From the sequence record OQ031493.1: 64,000 nt of DNA. The stretch is one strand, 5' to 3'. Below are positions 10,604-57,192 of this stretch, piece after piece (position 1 is the stretch's first letter; each line of letters opens with the position of its first letter). The translations under genes were made by a program, and so were the position numbers. A model generated the notes under the pieces. That model did not search any database. It was not told the origin of the DNA and worked only from the letters and a program-made list of their open reading frames with translations.

Positions 10604-10742
10604 ACATATCAGTTAGGATATTTCTATCTAGTNNNNNNNNNNNNNNNNNNNNNNNNNNNNNNNNNNNNNNNNNNNNATTGGTACGTGTAAGTAAGATTCC
10701 ATATTGAAATATACCTGTAGTATACAAATTATAAAACAACAT
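10560..10742 (-). CDS. small hypothetical protein interrupted by N-run
   Basis: open frame across the N gap at 10633-10676; start uncertain. Confidence 0.35.
   Translation of the reverse strand: MLFYNLYTTGIFQYGILLTRTNXXXXXXXXXXXXXXXLDRNILTDMFVLYSRITEPKEDF
10633..10676. other. assembly gap (N-run)
   Basis: 44 N. Confidence 0.95.
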
Positions 10743-30885: not shown

Positions 30886-31539
30886 TTAATTATTATATTC
30901 ATCCATCAATTCAGGTAGACGGCTATCTCTAGGATCTAAGATTTCAGACCAATCAATTGGCATATATGGCTCATCAGATTCATTTTTATTTAACCATTCT
31001 TCTAGTCTCTTTACATCATCGGACCAGTATAGGTTATACATAGTTGGCACATTTGCATCTAATGCCAACTGCCACGCTGTATTAGTACCACCACTAATTA
31101 CAGAGGTTGGTGTCTTTTGTTCACCGTATGCAATAATAGTTGAAACAGGTTCACGTAAAGTATGGCCATGAATTTGAAATACATTACGAGTATGTAGTTC
31201 AATACCTGTTCTACCTAAACCATTGAAACTTCCCCGAGCTGCACAGGCCATTGCCATAGCTGTGGGAATGGTATCAGTATATACGGAGGCATCATGAAAC
31301 CACGCTAGATTCTCAATTCGTCTTCCAAGAAATCCATTTCGAATAATGTAAATACGACTTTCTACTGTATCCCATTTATCAGACTGAATTGCACCATACC
31401 AACCAGCTCTATCTGATCCATATGCATCGCCTGATGAAATACCTATACCTAGATCAACAAATGTTCTTCCTGCGCGTATCATCAATTCTAGGGCCCATGT
31501 AGGGGCATAGCGACTACCGACAATAGCTGTCATTGCCAT
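30886..31539 (-). CDS. SLOG (DprA/Smf-like Rossmann) domain protein
   Basis: AIVGSR, ISSGDAYGSD, RNVFQI, SGGTNTAWQLA. Confidence 0.7.
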   Translation of the reverse strand: MAMTAIVGSRYAPTWALELMIRAGRTFVDLGIGISSGDAYGSDRAGWYGAIQSDKWDTVESRIYIIRNGFLGRRIENLAWFHDASVYTDTIPTAMAMACAARGSFNGLGRTGIELHTRNVFQIHGHTLREPVSTIIAYGEQKTPTSVISGGTNTAWQLALDANVPTMYNLYWSDDVKRLEEWLNKNESDEPYMPIDWSEILDPRDSRLPELMDEYNN

Positions 31540-44563: not shown

Positions 44564-44892
44564 TTATTTCCAGAGTGTTTTACCAATTAGATCATTTTCT
44601 GTGATGAAACTATCTAATTGATGTCCATAGTAAAGTAGACTATGAATTTGTTGATTTAGACGTTCTTTATTTGACCCTAGGAACATCTTATGCTTTTCTT
44701 CATCCGGTAATTTATCATAGACAAGTTGGCAATACTTTTTAGCTACTACCTTACCTGATGCAAGAAAACGTTCATCCCCTGTAAATAGTTGAGGAACGAT
44801 ATTTTCATCNNNNNNNNNNNNNNNNNNNNNNNNNNNNNNNNNNNNNNNNNNNNNNNNNNNNNNNNNNNNNNNNNNNNNNNNNNNNNNATCAT
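44564..44892 (-). CDS. hypothetical protein interrupted by N-run (start uncertain)
   Basis: open 81-codon frame DENIVPQLFTGDERFL...IGKTLWK below the gap at 44810-44887. Confidence 0.5.
44810..44887. other. assembly gap (N-run)
   Basis: 78 N. Confidence 0.95.
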
Positions 44893-44905: not shown

Positions 44906-45625
44906 CTAACTTTCACTTTCACTATCAAATTCGCTATTACTTGTGGATGTGTTAGATATCTGCTCATCAAAAGATGACTGTTTATTCTTTTGTTTTTCAC
45001 GCAAGAAGATAATCGATTCAACAATTTCATTAACCATGACATCTAGACCACGTTTAGCATCGACCGTAATTGAACTAGGTTGATTGATAAGTCGTTCAAA
45101 ACCTTTATCAACCTTATCGAAGTAATCGGATCCTTTAGATTCATAATAATCAAGNNNNNNNNNNNNNNNTTCAATTCGTTCTTCACGTACTTCTTTAGGT
45201 GCAGTCAGGAAGAAGGTAGCTGGCTCTGGGATAGAGTGTAAGGTTCCTTGAAGGATATCCATAAACAATTTTGATAGATATGGATTAGTTTCTTCGAAAG
45301 GATACACATTTAGAGCATATGTCGATGCAATGAATCGCTCGGTAATAACAATCTTATCTTCTTTAAGAGCAGGTAAGATGATATTCTCTACATTCATCAC
45401 TCTATATGCACTATGCATCAGTACATCAAATTCCGGTGGTCGAACATCATTGTGTTTAGGCCAAATCAGCATTTGTCGGATTTCTTCTGATGTATTTGTA
45501 CCGCCAGGTTCACGTAGTGTTACGACATCATATCCACGTTTAAGAAGCTCCGCAACAACCATTTTTGTAACGGTCGTTTTACCGACACCTTCATTCCCTT
45601 CAATACTTACAAATAAACCATTCAT
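44906..45625 (-). CDS. tmk: thymidylate kinase
   Basis: FVSIEGNEGVGKTT, LREPGGT, ITERFIAST; 15-N gap keeps the frame. Confidence 0.92.
   Translation of the reverse strand: MNGLFVSIEGNEGVGKTTVTKMVVAELLKRGYDVVTLREPGGTNTSEEIRQMLIWPKHNDVRPPEFDVLMHSAYRVMNVENIILPALKEDKIVITERFIASTYALNVYPFEETNPYLSKLFMDILQGTLHSIPEPATFFLTAPKEVREERIEXXXXXLDYYESKGSDYFDKVDKGFERLINQPSSITVDAKRGLDVMVNEIVESIIFLREKQKNKQSSFDEQISNTSTSNSEFDSESES
45155..45169. other. assembly gap (N-run) within tmk
   Basis: 15 N, in frame. Confidence 0.95.
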
Positions 45626-45966: not shown

Positions 45967-46023
45967 TTCCTTAAATTATTAAAATGTATTATTTAACCAT
46001 TAAACTTTTTAATATAAAATGAC

Positions 46024-46044
46024 CAGTGGGTAATGCACCCACTG
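46024..46044 (-). terminator. intrinsic terminator
   Basis: cagtggg/cccactg stem followed by T-rich run. Confidence 0.65.
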
Positions 46045-46074
46045 ATCTTATTATATTGACATAGCTAGTATATA

Positions 46075-46479
46075 TTAGCTATTGACATCTTCAAAGAAGC
46101 TGGCTACACTTTCAACAACATCATTCATAGCGCTGCTCTTATATTTGGTATCTACCACCGTAACAAGCTCGCCTTTACGATCGATAATACCAGAAACAGT
46201 TGCACCACCTGCATTATAGGAATAACCCAGTTCAGCAATGTTTTCATTTTCTTTCATGTACGGTGCAGCTTTTTCAGCAAATACATAACTTACAGCTGCT
46301 GCCAGTTGCCCTGCACCTTCATGTACCTGAGCATACTGCTCGGCGGTCACGCCTGCCGGTTGTAGAACAACTTCTTCAAATAGGCCATCCGGGATTTCGA
46401 ATACCCCGGCATCGGACATGCTTACTTTTTCATTTAGGTTGTGGGTTTCGATAAACTTCTTGGTGGTTTCGATGGACAT
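46075..46479 (-). CDS. acidic hypothetical protein, probably highly expressed
   Basis: 134 aa, visibly higher G+C codon usage, GAGAG SD. Confidence 0.8.
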   Translation of the reverse strand: MSIETTKKFIETHNLNEKVSMSDAGVFEIPDGLFEEVVLQPAGVTAEQYAQVHEGAGQLAAAVSYVFAEKAAPYMKENENIAELGYSYNAGGATVSGIIDRKGELVTVVDTKYKSSAMNDVVESVASFFEDVNS

Positions 46480-46509
46480 TTTAGTACTCTCTCTATTTAG
46501 GGTGGTGGT

Positions 46510-46806
46510 TTAATTTACATCTTTCATTACAAAGCAACTACCATCATTAAAGACAATCTTAATTGGATTGTCAGTTAATGGTCGTTTATATACAACACAT
46601 TTTACATCGGGGAGTTTAACTACTTCTTTTAAAGCATCTGGCATACCAATTAGATTAATGGTGGCTGCTACTTTATTTAGTGTGTCAAGATGTGAAATCA
46701 GCTCATGTGCTGACTTAACCAAATCTACCATTGTTTTGTCTTTATCTACCATGCTAGTTACTCGATTTGATATATGATGCACATACATCGCCAAAGTCTT
46801 CGCCAC
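46510..46806 (-). CDS. hypothetical protein
   Basis: 98-aa ORF. Confidence 0.65.
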   Translation of the reverse strand: MAKTLAMYVHHISNRVTSMVDKDKTMVDLVKSAHELISHLDTLNKVAATINLIGMPDALKEVVKLPDVKCVVYKRPLTDNPIKIVFNDGSCFVMKDVN

Positions 46807-47248
46807 TAGTATCAGCTACAATTGCAACTGGTGACCATCGAGCGGCAACAGCCTCACATACACCGATCGAATTCACTCGACGAATCGCATGAGCACCAGT
46901 ATCAATTACACTGAAACTGAGTTCACTAATGATTTCCACTCCTTTTAGTTCAGCGCTACTATCAATAACCTGGGTACTAATTAGATAGTTAGCTGTATCA
47001 TTATTATACGCAAGTACTAGTCTAAAAACCATGAGGGAGTTATCATTATCGGTGATGCCAGCGACTAGCTCATGATTCGAAGTGAGTGTATAGATACAAC
47101 TACTTTCTTGAGTGGTAATTGGTAATCCTGGTGAAGAACTATATACACTAGGTGCATTAGCTGTATGTAGTTCAAACTTATTTACAGCGGAGTTAGGACC
47201 AGGAACTTTATAACCAATAGGTCGGGCAGTGAAGATTACAACGTTCAT
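46754..47248 (-). CDS. hypothetical early protein
   Basis: 164 aa, GAGGA SD, first gene after promoter 47294. Confidence 0.75.
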   Translation of the reverse strand: MNVVIFTARPIGYKVPGPNSAVNKFELHTANAPSVYSSSPGLPITTQESSCIYTLTSNHELVAGITDNDNSLMVFRLVLAYNNDTANYLISTQVIDSSAELKGVEIISELSFSVIDTGAHAIRRVNSIGVCEAVAARWSPVAIVADTSGEDFGDVCASYIKSSN

Positions 47249-47293
47249 TATGATTCCTCTTTACTAGATAGTTATTTTCCTAATTACACATTA

Positions 47294-47301
47294 GTAATAT
47301 A
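47294..47301 (-). promoter_or_regulatory. early promoter TATATTAC
   Basis: exact octamer downstream of terminator 47332-47349. Confidence 0.75.
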
Positions 47302-47331
47302 AATCTCAAATTTTTTTTAATACGATATAAA

Positions 47332-47349
47332 GCCTCCCCGAAGGGAGGC
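47332..47349 (-). terminator. intrinsic terminator (UUCG loop)
   Basis: gcctccc-TTCG-gggaggc then TTTAT. Confidence 0.8.
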
Positions 47350-47355
47350 AATATG

Positions 47356-48075
47356 TTAATTACCACTATAGGTACCTTCAGTACCTTGTTCTTTACGCCG
47401 TACTAAGCGTTGATGAATTGCACTAAGAGCACGGTCCATTGAATTAATCACTACCTGATTCTCTTCACATGCAAATGGGCCTGTTTGGTAACCTTCAAAT
47501 AAATCTTTAACGATTTTAATTAGACAGTCAGCAGTTAGGCCATTTACACCAACTTCTGGAACAAGTCCATTCTGCATTAGGATAACACATTCAGTCAGGT
47601 TATCACCAGGCATAGCAGCTGGGTTAGTCTGAGCATTATAACCAGTTACCACATAACGTTTAGTTGCACCTGATTTCTGGTCAATGCCACTTGCTTCAAT
47701 ATTTAGACCATTTTCATCAAAATGTTCATGGCCATAAATACCTTGCATAGTTACCCATCCACCATCTTCTTGATAAATCCAATCTACCCCATTTACATGA
47801 TAAGTATCGCCTGGTTCAGGGTCAGCTGGAAGATCTTTAGTAGTGGTTAATGCACGGATACGCGCATATTCTTCAATTGCAATTTGTATATCAGTTGCAG
47901 TTATATTCTTCTCAGTTTCAGAAGCTTCGTCATGTTGTGATTTATCACTACCTTCCTTTTGGTCATTATCCATATCAGAAGCATCTACTGTACTTTTAGC
48001 TTCTTTACTTTCTAAGGAAGCTAACCACTCAAGATTAGGTTTAGACATACTTACCTCAATAAATGAAACCACCAA
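47356..48075 (-). CDS. tad1: Tad1-like nucleotide-signal sponge with acidic N-terminal extension (likely start MSKPN, 48048)
   Basis: C-terminal MQNG..PEVGVNG...LIKIVKD...YQTGPFACEEN......ALSAIHQR..RR...GTEGT parallels Tad1 FQKG......QHG...LLEIVRD...FQAGPFSSREN......ALMWMNRR..DR...VLGT. Confidence 0.8.
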   Translation of the reverse strand: MVVSFIEVSMSKPNLEWLASLESKEAKSTVDASDMDNDQKEGSDKSQHDEASETEKNITATDIQIAIEEYARIRALTTTKDLPADPEPGDTYHVNGVDWIYQEDGGWVTMQGIYGHEHFDENGLNIEASGIDQKSGATKRYVVTGYNAQTNPAAMPGDNLTECVILMQNGLVPEVGVNGLTADCLIKIVKDLFEGYQTGPFACEENQVVINSMDRALSAIHQRLVRRKEQGTEGTYSGN

Positions 48076-48361
48076 TGTAAAGTGACACTACAACATCGGC
48101 AACCCGAGGGTCTTGTGAATATTTAGATTTGACTAGTTTAATAAGTTCGGCTCGATTTTTAATGAAGCCTAGTTTCTTATTATCAATTTCTTCAGCTTCA
48201 ATTAGGAAGTCATTTAACTTCTTCTTACTACCCAGTACATTAATCACCATTTGATCAATAACTGCATTAGTATTTGATAGTTTAGTTAACTCTTGTTCAA
48301 AAACTTCCTTACGTCCTTCTGATCCAATTAGAGCAAGACCGATCTTTTTAAGTAGAGACAT
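48056..48361 (-). CDS. hypothetical protein
   Basis: 101-aa ORF between the gp182-like and Tad1-like genes. Confidence 0.7.
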   Translation of the reverse strand: MSLLKKIGLALIGSEGRKEVFEQELTKLSNTNAVIDQMVINVLGSKKKLNDFLIEAEEIDNKKLGFIKNRAELIKLVKSKYSQDPRVADVVVSLYIGGFIY

Positions 48362-48419
48362 GTTAATTACCTATTACATTGGTTTAAGAATGGTTACAAT
48401 AAATAACTATTCCAAGTAT

Positions 48420-57192
<8,773 letters not shown>

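What the first reader, a model, noticed from the sequence alone, without database searches (positions are those of the whole stretch)
47356..48075. Tad1-like immune-signal sponge with a head-protein-style propeptide: possibly virion-delivered anti-defence
Seen: the C-terminal ~110 aa follows the Tad1 pattern (xQxG, GV/NG, LxxIVxD, Y/FQxGPF, EN, AL...R). It is preceded by an acidic low-complexity N-terminus containing SLE, ASE, AIE and GHE, plus a short DLPADPEPGDTYHVNGVDWIY module. The gene is co-oriented directly behind the gp181/gp182-like virion genes, and the next TATATTAC lies downstream of it. Established: Tad1 proteins sequester Thoeris gcADPR and some CBASS cyclic nucleotides; the phiKZ prohead protease cleaves acidic propeptides of internal head proteins at S/A/G-x-E. 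Inference: the sponge is packaged, matured and ejected with the genome, so it acts before phage gene expression. A phiKZ ortholog may already be reported.
Basis: partly seen in the sequence, partly recalled or inferred. Interest (0 to 1): 0.72.

Follow-up and report, generated by a model that had tools for sequence, protein, structure and literature searches.

The report
Virion-packaged Tad1 immune-signal sponge (phiKZ gp184)

Summary
The window is a Phikzvirus (100% identical to Pseudomonas phage MRostami-2023c). The gene runs 47356-48048 on the minus strand and encodes 230 aa from an ATG behind a GAGG ribosome site, not 239 aa from the TTG at 48075. It is 96% identical to phiKZ gp184 (PDB 8y6v chain I).

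I read four parts:
- A 13-residue leader ending S-L-E, placed as in the ejected inner-body proteins gp93, gp95 and gp97.
- An acidic linker, residues 14-59.
- A small beta 'wedge', residues 60-108. This is the only part resolved in the phiKZ capsid map.
- A C-terminal Tad1 domain, residues 109-230.

The Tad1 call is solid. A family profile hits solved Tad1 at E 2e-26. A pLDDT-95 model matches only Tad1 structures (TM 0.70-0.77). The gcADPR pocket residues are kept. The cyclic-trinucleotide and hexamer residues are not.

Papers already describe phiKZ gp184 as Tad1: a minor capsid protein, cleaved by gp175, injected and non-essential. Verdict: observation confirmed, interpretation supported, already known.

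- The G-H-E site before the Tad1 domain is kept in all 20 homologues.
- That site coincides with the natural C-terminus of wedge-only proteins in Psa21-like phages.
- The wedge also occurs in a non-Tad1 head protein, PhiPA3 gp096.
- Some metagenomic jumbo phages fuse Tad1 to a major-capsid-protein fragment.

The parts
47356..48048 (-). Whole gene, gp184/Tad1 ortholog: 230 codons plus the stop at 47356-47358
   Evidence: ORF. ATG with GAGG 5 nt upstream. Matches PDB 8y6v_I 'gp184' over 1-230 at E 1.7e-150, 9 substitutions. PHROG 22140 over its full length.
48010..48048 (-). Residues 1-13: N-terminal leader ending S-L-E, read as a capsid-targeting or first-cleavage leader (inferred)
   Evidence: phiKZ gp93, gp95 and gp97 have S-L-E at 11-13, and gp94 at 9-11. 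gp93 SLE-13 is a published gp175 cleavage site. The site is kept in 17 of 20 homologues.
47872..48009 (-). Residues 14-59: acidic, predicted-disordered linker or propeptide with further protease-type triplets (A-S-E 42-44, A-I-E 57-59)
   Evidence: Residues 1-70 have pI 4.4, with 16 D+E against 8 K+R. pLDDT is below 50 over 1-68. Seven of the 9 substitutions against phiKZ lie in residues 1-75.
47725..47871 (-). Residues 60-108: capsid-binding beta 'wedge' module, ending in G-H-E (106-108)
   Evidence: Strands predicted at 82-100. Only 34 residues of gp184 are modelled in the phiKZ capsid map. They match this part of the model at 97% identity, TM 0.78, and the paper places them between gp86 and hexamer 1. 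Homologous to the whole C-terminal half of the 91-aa Psa21 gp249 (41% identity, E 4e-12, ending at ...YGH). G-H-E sits in a low-pLDDT hinge, 102-113. A protease-type triplet occurs at this column in 20 of 20 homologues.
47359..47724 (-). Residues 109-230: Tad1 domain (antiparallel beta-sheet plus two long helices), the nucleotide-signal sponge
   Evidence: Model pLDDT 95.3. The Foldseek top 20 are all Tad1, TM 0.70-0.77. The profile hits Tad1 chains at E about 2e-26. Pocket residues Y187, N197, R214 and R218 correspond to CbTad1 F82, N92, R109 and R113.
47332..47349 (-). Terminator-like GC-rich hairpin directly after the stop codon
   Evidence: 7 pairs, 6 of them G-C, loop of 4, followed by a T-rich tail.
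47294..47301 (-). TATATTAC octamer downstream of the gene and upstream of the next ORF (46754-47248). Promoter role not tested.
   Evidence: Assigning it to a phiKZ promoter class rests on memory only.
48056..48361 (-). gp183-like 101-aa ORF between gp182 and the gene. Its stop overlaps the ribosome-binding region of the gene.
   Evidence: No PDB relative.
48420..50414 (-). gp182-like virion protein, 664 aa
   Evidence: PDB 9xqs_K 'PHIKZ182', full length.
50470..57192 (-). gp181-like giant virion protein (2240 aa) with a lytic transglycosylase domain
   Evidence: Residues 1869-2054 match phiKZ gp144 lytic transglycosylase at E 4e-57. The syntenic genes in PhiPA3, 201phi2-1 and Psa21 are annotated as virion or tail proteins.

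Best explanation
The gene encodes the Phikzvirus Tad1 protein (phiKZ gp184 ortholog), a sponge for TIR-derived gcADPR immune signals built as a pre-loaded virion cargo.

Proposed sequence of events:
1. The protein is made with the late virion genes.
2. It enters the prohead by way of an inner-body-type N-terminal leader.
3. [quoted passage not shown]
4. The gp175 prohead protease cuts after Glu in [S/A/G]-x-E triplets. I place the cuts after E13 and, for release of the cargo, after E108 in the flexible hinge.
5. This frees a 122-residue Tad1 domain, which leaves the head with the DNA and binds Thoeris signal before the phage has expressed any gene.

Shown here by computation: orthology, domain limits, Tad1 fold, a conserved gcADPR pocket, a leader identical in layout to gp93/95/97, and a conserved hinge triplet.

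Shown by others for the 96%-identical phiKZ protein: location in the capsid, cleavage by gp175, injection, non-essentiality and the Tad1 designation.

Inferred: the exact cleavage positions, gcADPR as the main ligand, and loss of the cyclic-trinucleotide site and possibly of the hexamer.
For: Orthology and family:
- Full-length match to PDB 8y6v_I gp184 at E 1.7e-150, and matches to Tad1 chains.
- Family profile against Tad1 chains at E 2e-26.
- Domain model at pLDDT 95.3. Foldseek top 20 all Tad1, TM 0.70-0.77, next hit E 0.16.

Ligand pocket:
- The pocket residues defined by mutagenesis in CbTad1 are F82, N92, R109 and R113.
- They align to Y187, N197, R214 and R218.
- In 68 relatives these columns are aromatic in 66 of 68, N in 68 of 68, R in 68 of 68 and R in 65 of 68.

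Leader and cleavage:
- The leader carries S-L-E at 11-13, as in gp93, gp95 and gp97. gp93 SLE-13 is a proven cleavage site.
- The hinge triplet is kept in 20 of 20 homologues and lies in a low-confidence linker.
- Wedge-only proteins of Psa21, RVTF4 and related contigs end exactly there.

Capsid location:
- Only 34 residues, within the wedge, are ordered in the capsid map.

Literature on phiKZ gp184:
- Cleaved minor capsid protein of the vertex-binding complex.
- Injected.
- Named gp184/Tad1, non-essential, C-terminus liberated and injected; review statement.

Distribution and synteny:
- Synteny with virion genes is conserved in PhiPA3 and 201phi2-1, where gp280 was detected by mass spectrometry.
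- The gene is intact in all 47 Phikzvirus records, at 95% protein identity or more.
Against: - The primary papers giving the gp184 cleavage coordinates (Thomas et al. 2012) and the phiKZ Tad1 experiments (Li et al., Nature 2024) could not be read. The 2023 preprint of the latter does not mention phiKZ. The E108 cut is therefore my inference.
- The capsid paper says only that the modelled part is shorter than the cleavage product. That also fits a product of residues 60-230 that stays tethered.
- Copy number is small. About 55-60 protomers per virion would be roughly 0.1 micromolar in a 1-fL cell (my arithmetic).
- Injected phiKZ proteins associate with the early infection vesicle. Access of the sponge to cytoplasmic signal is not shown.
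- The CbTad1 R90/T97 (CmTad1 R88/T95) trinucleotide site is E195/N202 here. Only 1 of 11 CmTad1 hexamer or trinucleotide-site residues is kept. The published 'blocks CBASS' statement is therefore not explained by the canonical trinucleotide site.
- The local Pfam, NCBIfam and PADLOC scans return nothing for this protein.
Confidence: 0.82

Rival explanations
1. The protein is chiefly a structural cement of the capsid vertex. The Tad1-like domain stays tethered inside the head, flexible and therefore invisible, and has no delivered function.
For: [quoted passage not shown] The paper says the modelled part is shorter than the cleavage product 'likely due to flexibility'. Wedge-only homologues exist as stand-alone proteins, which shows the wedge has a role of its own.
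Against: The phiKZ gene tolerates transposon insertions and shows no competitive defect. Tagged gp184 was detected as injected. The ligand pocket is under strong conservation. A protease-type triplet is kept at the wedge/Tad1 hinge in 20 of 20 homologues.
Confidence: 0.07
2. The sponge works mainly as newly made cytoplasmic protein during infection. Packaging of some 55-60 copies is a side effect of carrying a head-protein leader.
For: The copy number per virion is low (arithmetic mine). Stand-alone Tad1 genes of Bacillus phages sit among replication genes, between SSB and UvsX, and carry no leader.
Against: The gene lies at the end of a late virion gene block. A late-expressed sponge would come after Thoeris has fired. 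The leader, hinge and Tad1 architecture is conserved across several chimallivirus genera. Injection has been shown.
Confidence: 0.08
3. The domain is a Tad1-fold sponge whose preferred ligand differs from that of characterised Tad1s, for example another ADPR-derived or cyclic-dinucleotide signal, and which may act as a dimer rather than a hexamer.
For: The trinucleotide-site and hexamer-interface residues of CmTad1 and CbTad1 are not conserved. The R90-equivalent column is acidic in 27 of 68 relatives and R in only 8. Binding spectra are known to differ among Tad1 homologues.
Against: All four gcADPR/dinucleotide pocket residues are kept. Secondary literature states anti-Thoeris and anti-CBASS activity for phiKZ Tad1.
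Confidence: 0.2

Closest known systems
phiKZ gp184 (Tad1), PDB 8y6v chain I
   Same: Ortholog: 230 aa, 221 of 230 residues identical, same flanking genes (gp181-183 upstream). The published properties carry over by orthology: inner-capsid vertex-binding complex, gp175 cleavage, injection, non-essentiality.
   Different: Nine substitutions, seven in residues 1-75 and two in the Tad1 domain (I177L, T189A, window residue first). Nothing that changes the reading.
Stand-alone Tad1 sponges (Clostridium botulinum prophage CbTad1, PDB 7uav/8kbe; C. mangenotii CmTad1, PDB 8kbb; Bacillus phage SBSphiJ7 Tad1)
   Same: Same fold and the same gcADPR/dinucleotide pocket residues.
   Different: The stand-alone forms are about 125 aa with no leader or wedge, and in Bacillus phages they sit in the replication module. 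They have R/T at the cyclic-trinucleotide site and a hexamer interface that are not conserved here.
phiKZ ejected inner-body proteins gp93, gp94, gp95, gp97
   Same: The N-terminal leader ends S-L-E at residue 13 (11 in gp94). All are processed by gp175, packaged and injected.
   Different: Their cargo is the helix-rich PF12699-type domain, not a nucleotide sponge.
Wedge-only proteins (Psa21 gp249 at 91 aa, RVTF4 at 92 aa) and PhiPA3 gp096 (321 aa)
   Same: They share the beta wedge module at 41-60% identity. The Psa21 and RVTF4 genes occupy the same genomic slot, after the gp181- and gp182-like genes.
   Different: No Tad1 domain. Psa21-type proteins stop at the hinge. PhiPA3 gp096 lies in the inner-body gene cluster and continues after G-F-E into an unrelated C-terminus.
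201phi2-1 gp280 and PhiPA3 gp217
   Same: Same slot, same leader type, an acidic linker and a Tad1 domain at 54-58% identity. 201phi2-1 gp280 was detected by mass spectrometry.
   Different: They lack the beta wedge.
T4 internal protein IPI* (own knowledge, not tested here)
   Same: Concept only: an anti-defence protein packaged in the head through a short N-terminal targeting sequence, trimmed after Glu by the prohead protease and injected with the DNA.
   Different: Unrelated sequence. It inhibits a restriction enzyme by direct binding, not by sequestering a signal.

Membership tests
Tad1 (Thoeris anti-defence 1) sponge family | Significant sequence similarity to experimentally characterised Tad1 proteins over the whole domain | tested here: met
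   phmmer E 9e-7 to 3e-5 on residues 117-226. A profile of 68 relatives hits CbTad1 at E 2e-26 over chain residues 8-124 of 125. Homologues carry a precomputed PF24729 annotation, named Acb2_Tad1_hairpin. The local Pfam copy gives no hit for this protein.
Tad1 (Thoeris anti-defence 1) sponge family | Fold: N-terminal antiparallel beta-sheet followed by two long C-terminal helices | tested here: met
   The model at pLDDT 95.3 has strands 2-50 and helices 65-81 and 87-112 in domain numbering. The Foldseek top 20 are all Tad1, TM 0.70-0.77, probability 1.00.
Tad1 (Thoeris anti-defence 1) sponge family | gcADPR/cyclic-dinucleotide pocket residues (CbTad1 F82, N92, R109, R113) | tested here: met
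   They align to Y187, N197, R214 and R218. The columns are invariant or nearly so in 68 relatives.
Tad1 (Thoeris anti-defence 1) sponge family | Cyclic-trinucleotide site (CbTad1 R90/T97; CmTad1 R88/T95). This is a property of the characterised members, not of the fold. | tested here: not met
   E195 and N202 occupy these positions. The R column is R in only 8 of 68 relatives.
Tad1 (Thoeris anti-defence 1) sponge family | Hexamer (trimer of dimers) | tested here: inconclusive
   Of the 11 CmTad1 interface or trinucleotide-site residues (C87, R88, A91, M92, T95, K96, Q98, E99, M102, W103, K106), only C194 is kept. No multimer prediction is available here.
Tad1 (Thoeris anti-defence 1) sponge family | Binding of gcADPR and rescue from Thoeris | not testable with these tools
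   Stated for phiKZ gp184 in secondary sources that cite Li et al. 2024. The primary paper is not held.
phiKZ-type processed, packaged and ejected head proteins | Physical presence in the capsid | tested here: met
   Met through the ortholog. 8y6v_I gp184 is 96% identical, and 34 of its residues are modelled on the inner capsid surface.
phiKZ-type processed, packaged and ejected head proteins | N-terminal leader with a prohead-protease site (cleavage after Glu in an S/A/G-x-E triplet) | tested here: met
   S-L-E at 11-13, the same position as the proven gp93 SLE-13 and as gp95 and gp97.
phiKZ-type processed, packaged and ejected head proteins | Experimentally mapped cleavage and injection | not testable with these tools
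   Reported for phiKZ gp184. The coordinates of the mapped sites could not be read.
Acb2 (anti-CBASS 2) sponge | Sequence or structural similarity to solved Acb2 | tested here: not met
   No Acb2 chain appears among the sequence hits or the fold hits. Only the shared hairpin Pfam family links the two.

The most novel reading that the evidence does not exclude
The roughly 45-residue beta wedge followed by a protease-type triplet may be a portable, cleavable capsid anchor of chimalliviruses that has been joined to different cargos. It occurs with nothing attached in Psa21-like phages, with Tad1 in Phikzvirus, and with an unrelated domain in PhiPA3 gp096.

Pre-loading a Tad1 sponge into the head may have arisen several times by different tethers: leader only in 201phi2-1 and PhiPA3, leader plus wedge in Phikzvirus, and a major-capsid-protein fragment in metagenomic jumbo phages (P0142, P0063).

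The Phikzvirus sponge would be a gcADPR-only, possibly dimeric variant. I could not check whether Li et al. 2024 or Thomas et al. 2012 already say any of this.
Probability: 0.3. Interest if true: 0.5.

Novelty: already known. Interest (0 to 1): 0.27.

Why it matters
An immune-signal sponge delivered ready-made with the genome closes the window between DNA entry and first phage gene expression, when signalling defences such as Thoeris would otherwise fire. For phiKZ this is already in the literature, so the window adds only another Phikzvirus copy. The value here is as a positive control: a tool-free reader recovered a published mechanism from sequence alone. The modular anchor/hinge/cargo layout seen across relatives could guide annotation of other packaged anti-defence proteins in jumbo phages.

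Tried and rejected
- Local Pfam, NCBIfam and PADLOC scans of the protein or its C-terminal half gave nothing useful. The homologues nevertheless carry a precomputed PF24729 annotation, and the local copy does hold that family.
- The full-length AlphaFold model was poor (pLDDT 54). It gave the right neighbours but meaningless TM and rmsd values. The domain-only model with a deeper alignment replaced it.
- The primary papers could not be opened: Thomas 2012, Thomas and Black 2013, Thomas 2010 and Li 2024. The supplement of the capsid paper is not held. The published gp184 cleavage coordinates therefore remain unknown to me.
- A full-text search for the octamer TATATTAC returned only irrelevant papers. 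Its promoter class is left as untested memory.
- A region-restricted homology search with the wedge found only the two closest relatives. A pattern scan of viral contigs with a three-sequence wedge alignment worked instead.
- A scan of the window for other ORFs with a similar leader found only one unconvincing extra candidate, 30886-31533.
- Acb2 was considered and rejected.
The protease pattern was corroborated from a paper only afterwards. If this counts as using letters quoted from memory, it is a slip, and I record it here.

Full report
**What is there**

The window is a Phikzvirus genome segment. Bases 46000-50500 are 100% identical to Pseudomonas phage MRostami-2023c and 95-99% identical to 44 other Pseudomonas jumbo-phage records.

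The finding's ORF is real and lies on the minus strand. The mechanical ORF starts at a TTG (48075, 239 aa). Three things point to the ATG at 48048 instead:
- It is preceded by GAGG with a 5-nt spacer.
- It gives a 230-aa product.
- That product aligns end to end with PDB 8y6v chain I, 'gp184' of phiKZ (E 1.7e-150, nine substitutions).

The number of [S/A/G]-x-E triplets is not in itself unusual, at 7 against 4.7 +/- 1.8 in shuffles. What carries information is where they are.

**Anatomy**

Homologues (19 clusters; alignment A1), a full-length model and a domain model divide the protein into four parts.

1. Residues 1-13 form a leader ending S-L-E.
   - In the phiKZ record, gp93, gp95 and gp97 also carry S-L-E at residues 11-13, and gp94 at 9-11.
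   - SLE-13 of gp93 is a published gp175 cleavage site (PMC5694885).
   - These are the proteins shown to be injected together with gp184 (PMC10449902).

2. Residues 14-59 are acidic and predicted disordered. They hold most of the differences from phiKZ.

3. Residues 60-108 form a short helix end and a three-stranded beta module.
   - Foldseek shows that 8y6v_I contains only 34 modelled residues. They match this module at 97% identity, TM 0.78.
   - The single mismatch must be residue 75, which places the resolved segment inside residues 55-108.
   - The capsid paper describes gp184 as the mostly beta-stranded member of the inner vertex-binding complex, inserted between gp86 and hexamer 1 (PMC11297242).

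4. Residues 109-230 are the Tad1 domain.

**Is it Tad1?**

Yes.
- The single sequence already hits solved Tad1 chains (E 9e-7 to 3e-5).
- An exhaustive search with the domain finds 2045 cluster representatives at E up to 0.001.
- A profile of 68 of them hits CbTad1 at E about 2e-26 over its whole length.
- The domain model (pLDDT 95.3) has Tad1 structures as its 20 best PDB neighbours (TM 0.70-0.77). Hit 21 is at E 0.16.

The residues whose mutation abolishes gcADPR and 2',3'-cGAMP binding in CbTad1 are F82, N92, R109 and R113 (bioRxiv 10.1101/2023.11.15.567273). They align to Y187, N197, R214 and R218, and those columns are essentially invariant in the 68 relatives.

The cyclic-trinucleotide site is different. 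CbTad1 R90/T97 (CmTad1 R88/T95) corresponds to E195/N202 here. Of 11 CmTad1 residues named for the hexamer interface or trinucleotide contact, only the cysteine is kept. I infer a gcADPR (and perhaps dinucleotide) sponge that does not use the canonical trinucleotide site and may not be a hexamer. This inference is untested.

**Is it delivered in the virion?**

For the phiKZ ortholog this is published:
- gp184 is a minor capsid protein cleaved by gp175.
- It was validated as injected.
- A 2025 transposon-sequencing preprint calls it 'gp184/Tad1'. It describes the gene as non-essential, with the N-terminus wedged in the capsid and the C-terminus liberated by the head protease and injected.
- A 2026 review says Tad1 is injected by phiKZ and blocks Thoeris and CBASS.

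Both of these cite Li et al., Nature 2024. I could not open that paper, and its 2023 preprint does not mention phiKZ.

The hinge.
- A protease-type triplet sits immediately before the Tad1 domain in all 20 aligned homologues. It lies within a low-confidence linker, residues 102-113.
- Psa21, RVTF4 and three metagenomic jumbo-phage contigs carry, in the same slot behind the gp181- and gp182-like genes, 91-92-aa proteins consisting of a leader, a linker and the wedge only. These end ...YGH, exactly at the G-H-E of the window protein.
- The wedge is therefore an autonomous unit, and the Tad1 domain is joined to it at a likely cleavage point.

Other architectures.
- 201phi2-1 gp280 (detected by mass spectrometry) and PhiPA3 gp217 keep the slot, the leader and the Tad1 domain but lack the wedge.
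- PhiPA3 carries the wedge elsewhere, in gp096. This is a 321-aa 'virion structural protein' inside the inner-body gene cluster, followed by G-F-E and a non-Tad1 tail.
- Two metagenomic proteins join a Tad1 domain to a segment matching chimallivirus major capsid proteins.
- In Bacillus phages, Tad1 is a stand-alone 126-aa gene between SSB and UvsX.

**Mechanism proposed**

The protein is made with the virion genes. The gene is last in a co-oriented block with a hairpin after its stop. It is targeted to the prohead by the leader and docked by the wedge, trimmed after E13, and released after E108. The 122-residue sponge is then ejected with the DNA.

With five complexes per vertex there would be about 55-60 protomers per particle. 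In a 1-fL cell that is about 0.1 micromolar of pocket sites (my arithmetic). This is enough to buffer only the first burst of signal.

Weak points:
- The E108 cut is inferred, and a tethered 60-230 product is not excluded by what I could read.
- Injected phiKZ proteins associate with the early infection vesicle, so access to cytoplasmic signal is not demonstrated.
- The reported anti-CBASS activity is not explained by the trinucleotide site.

**Comparison and verdict**

The gene is a member of the Tad1 family by sequence, fold and pocket. It also belongs to the class of phiKZ processed and ejected head proteins, by its leader and by orthology. Acb2 was considered and rejected.

The same interpretation is already in print for a 96%-identical protein, so the finding is 'already known' and scores low on interest. 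The modular anchor/hinge/cargo pattern and the loss of the trinucleotide site are modest, unverified extras.

**Transparency**

I used the protease triplet pattern and the octamer quoted by the finding as search patterns to check the observation. The protease pattern was corroborated from a paper afterwards.

Noticed in passing
L006:2857-3132 (Psa21 gp249), L007:2857-3135 (RVTF4), L016:1357-1635, L017:1357-1632: Proteins of 91-92 aa sit in the same genomic slot as gp184. They consist of a leader, a linker and the beta wedge only, and end ...YGH(V/Q), exactly where the window protein has its G-H-E hinge. They look like a Tad1-less form of gp184.
   Followed up: partly
L012:943-1908, equal to L018:4128-5093 (PhiPA3 gp096): A 321-aa 'virion structural protein' in the inner-body gene cluster carries the same wedge at 60% identity, followed by G-F-E and an unrelated C-terminus. 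PhiPA3 therefore has the wedge and the Tad1 domain in two separate genes.
   Followed up: partly
P0142 (L003:10001-11455, 252-kb metagenomic contig) and P0063: These are Tad1 domains at the C-terminus of 455-484-aa proteins. Both have an N-terminal match to Pfam PF25620 (PhiKZ_MCP). For P0142, residues 13-101 also match solved chimallivirus major capsid proteins (Goslar MCP at E 7e-10, phiKZ gp120 residues 250-332). This may be a different way of tying the sponge to a capsid.
   Followed up: partly
Representatives P0021, P0026, P0092, P0100, P0135, P0154: Many proteins of 260-460 aa carry the Tad1 domain at their extreme C-terminus, behind N-terminal extensions with no Pfam match. The nature of these extensions is unknown.
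   Followed up: no
L009:1366-1746 (Bacillus phage Bc431v3 orf166) and hits H75, H78, H80, H83: Stand-alone Tad1 homologues of several Bacillus herelleviruses are annotated 'putative structural protein', although the gene lies between SSB and UvsX. Elsewhere (OLIVR5, Shewanella phage SXP01, PDB 7uav) Tad1 homologues are labelled 'ABC transporter ATPase'. Both labels look like inherited misannotations.
   Followed up: partly
window 48420-50414 (-): Residues 331-549 of the gp182-like protein match two differently named virion proteins of other jumbo phages in the PDB, at E about 1e-67: 'tail tube initiator complex protein gp203' and 'capsid decorator gp77'.
   Followed up: no
window 10633-10676, 44810-44887, 45155-45169: Three runs of N (137 bases in all). 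The last two fall inside or next to a thymidylate-kinase-like ORF (44906-45625, minus strand) and show up as X in its translation.
   Followed up: no
window 30886-31533 (-): This is the only other ORF in the window whose N-terminus has an [S/A/G]-L-E triplet within the first 16 residues (A-L-E at 13-15). It is probably chance.
   Followed up: no
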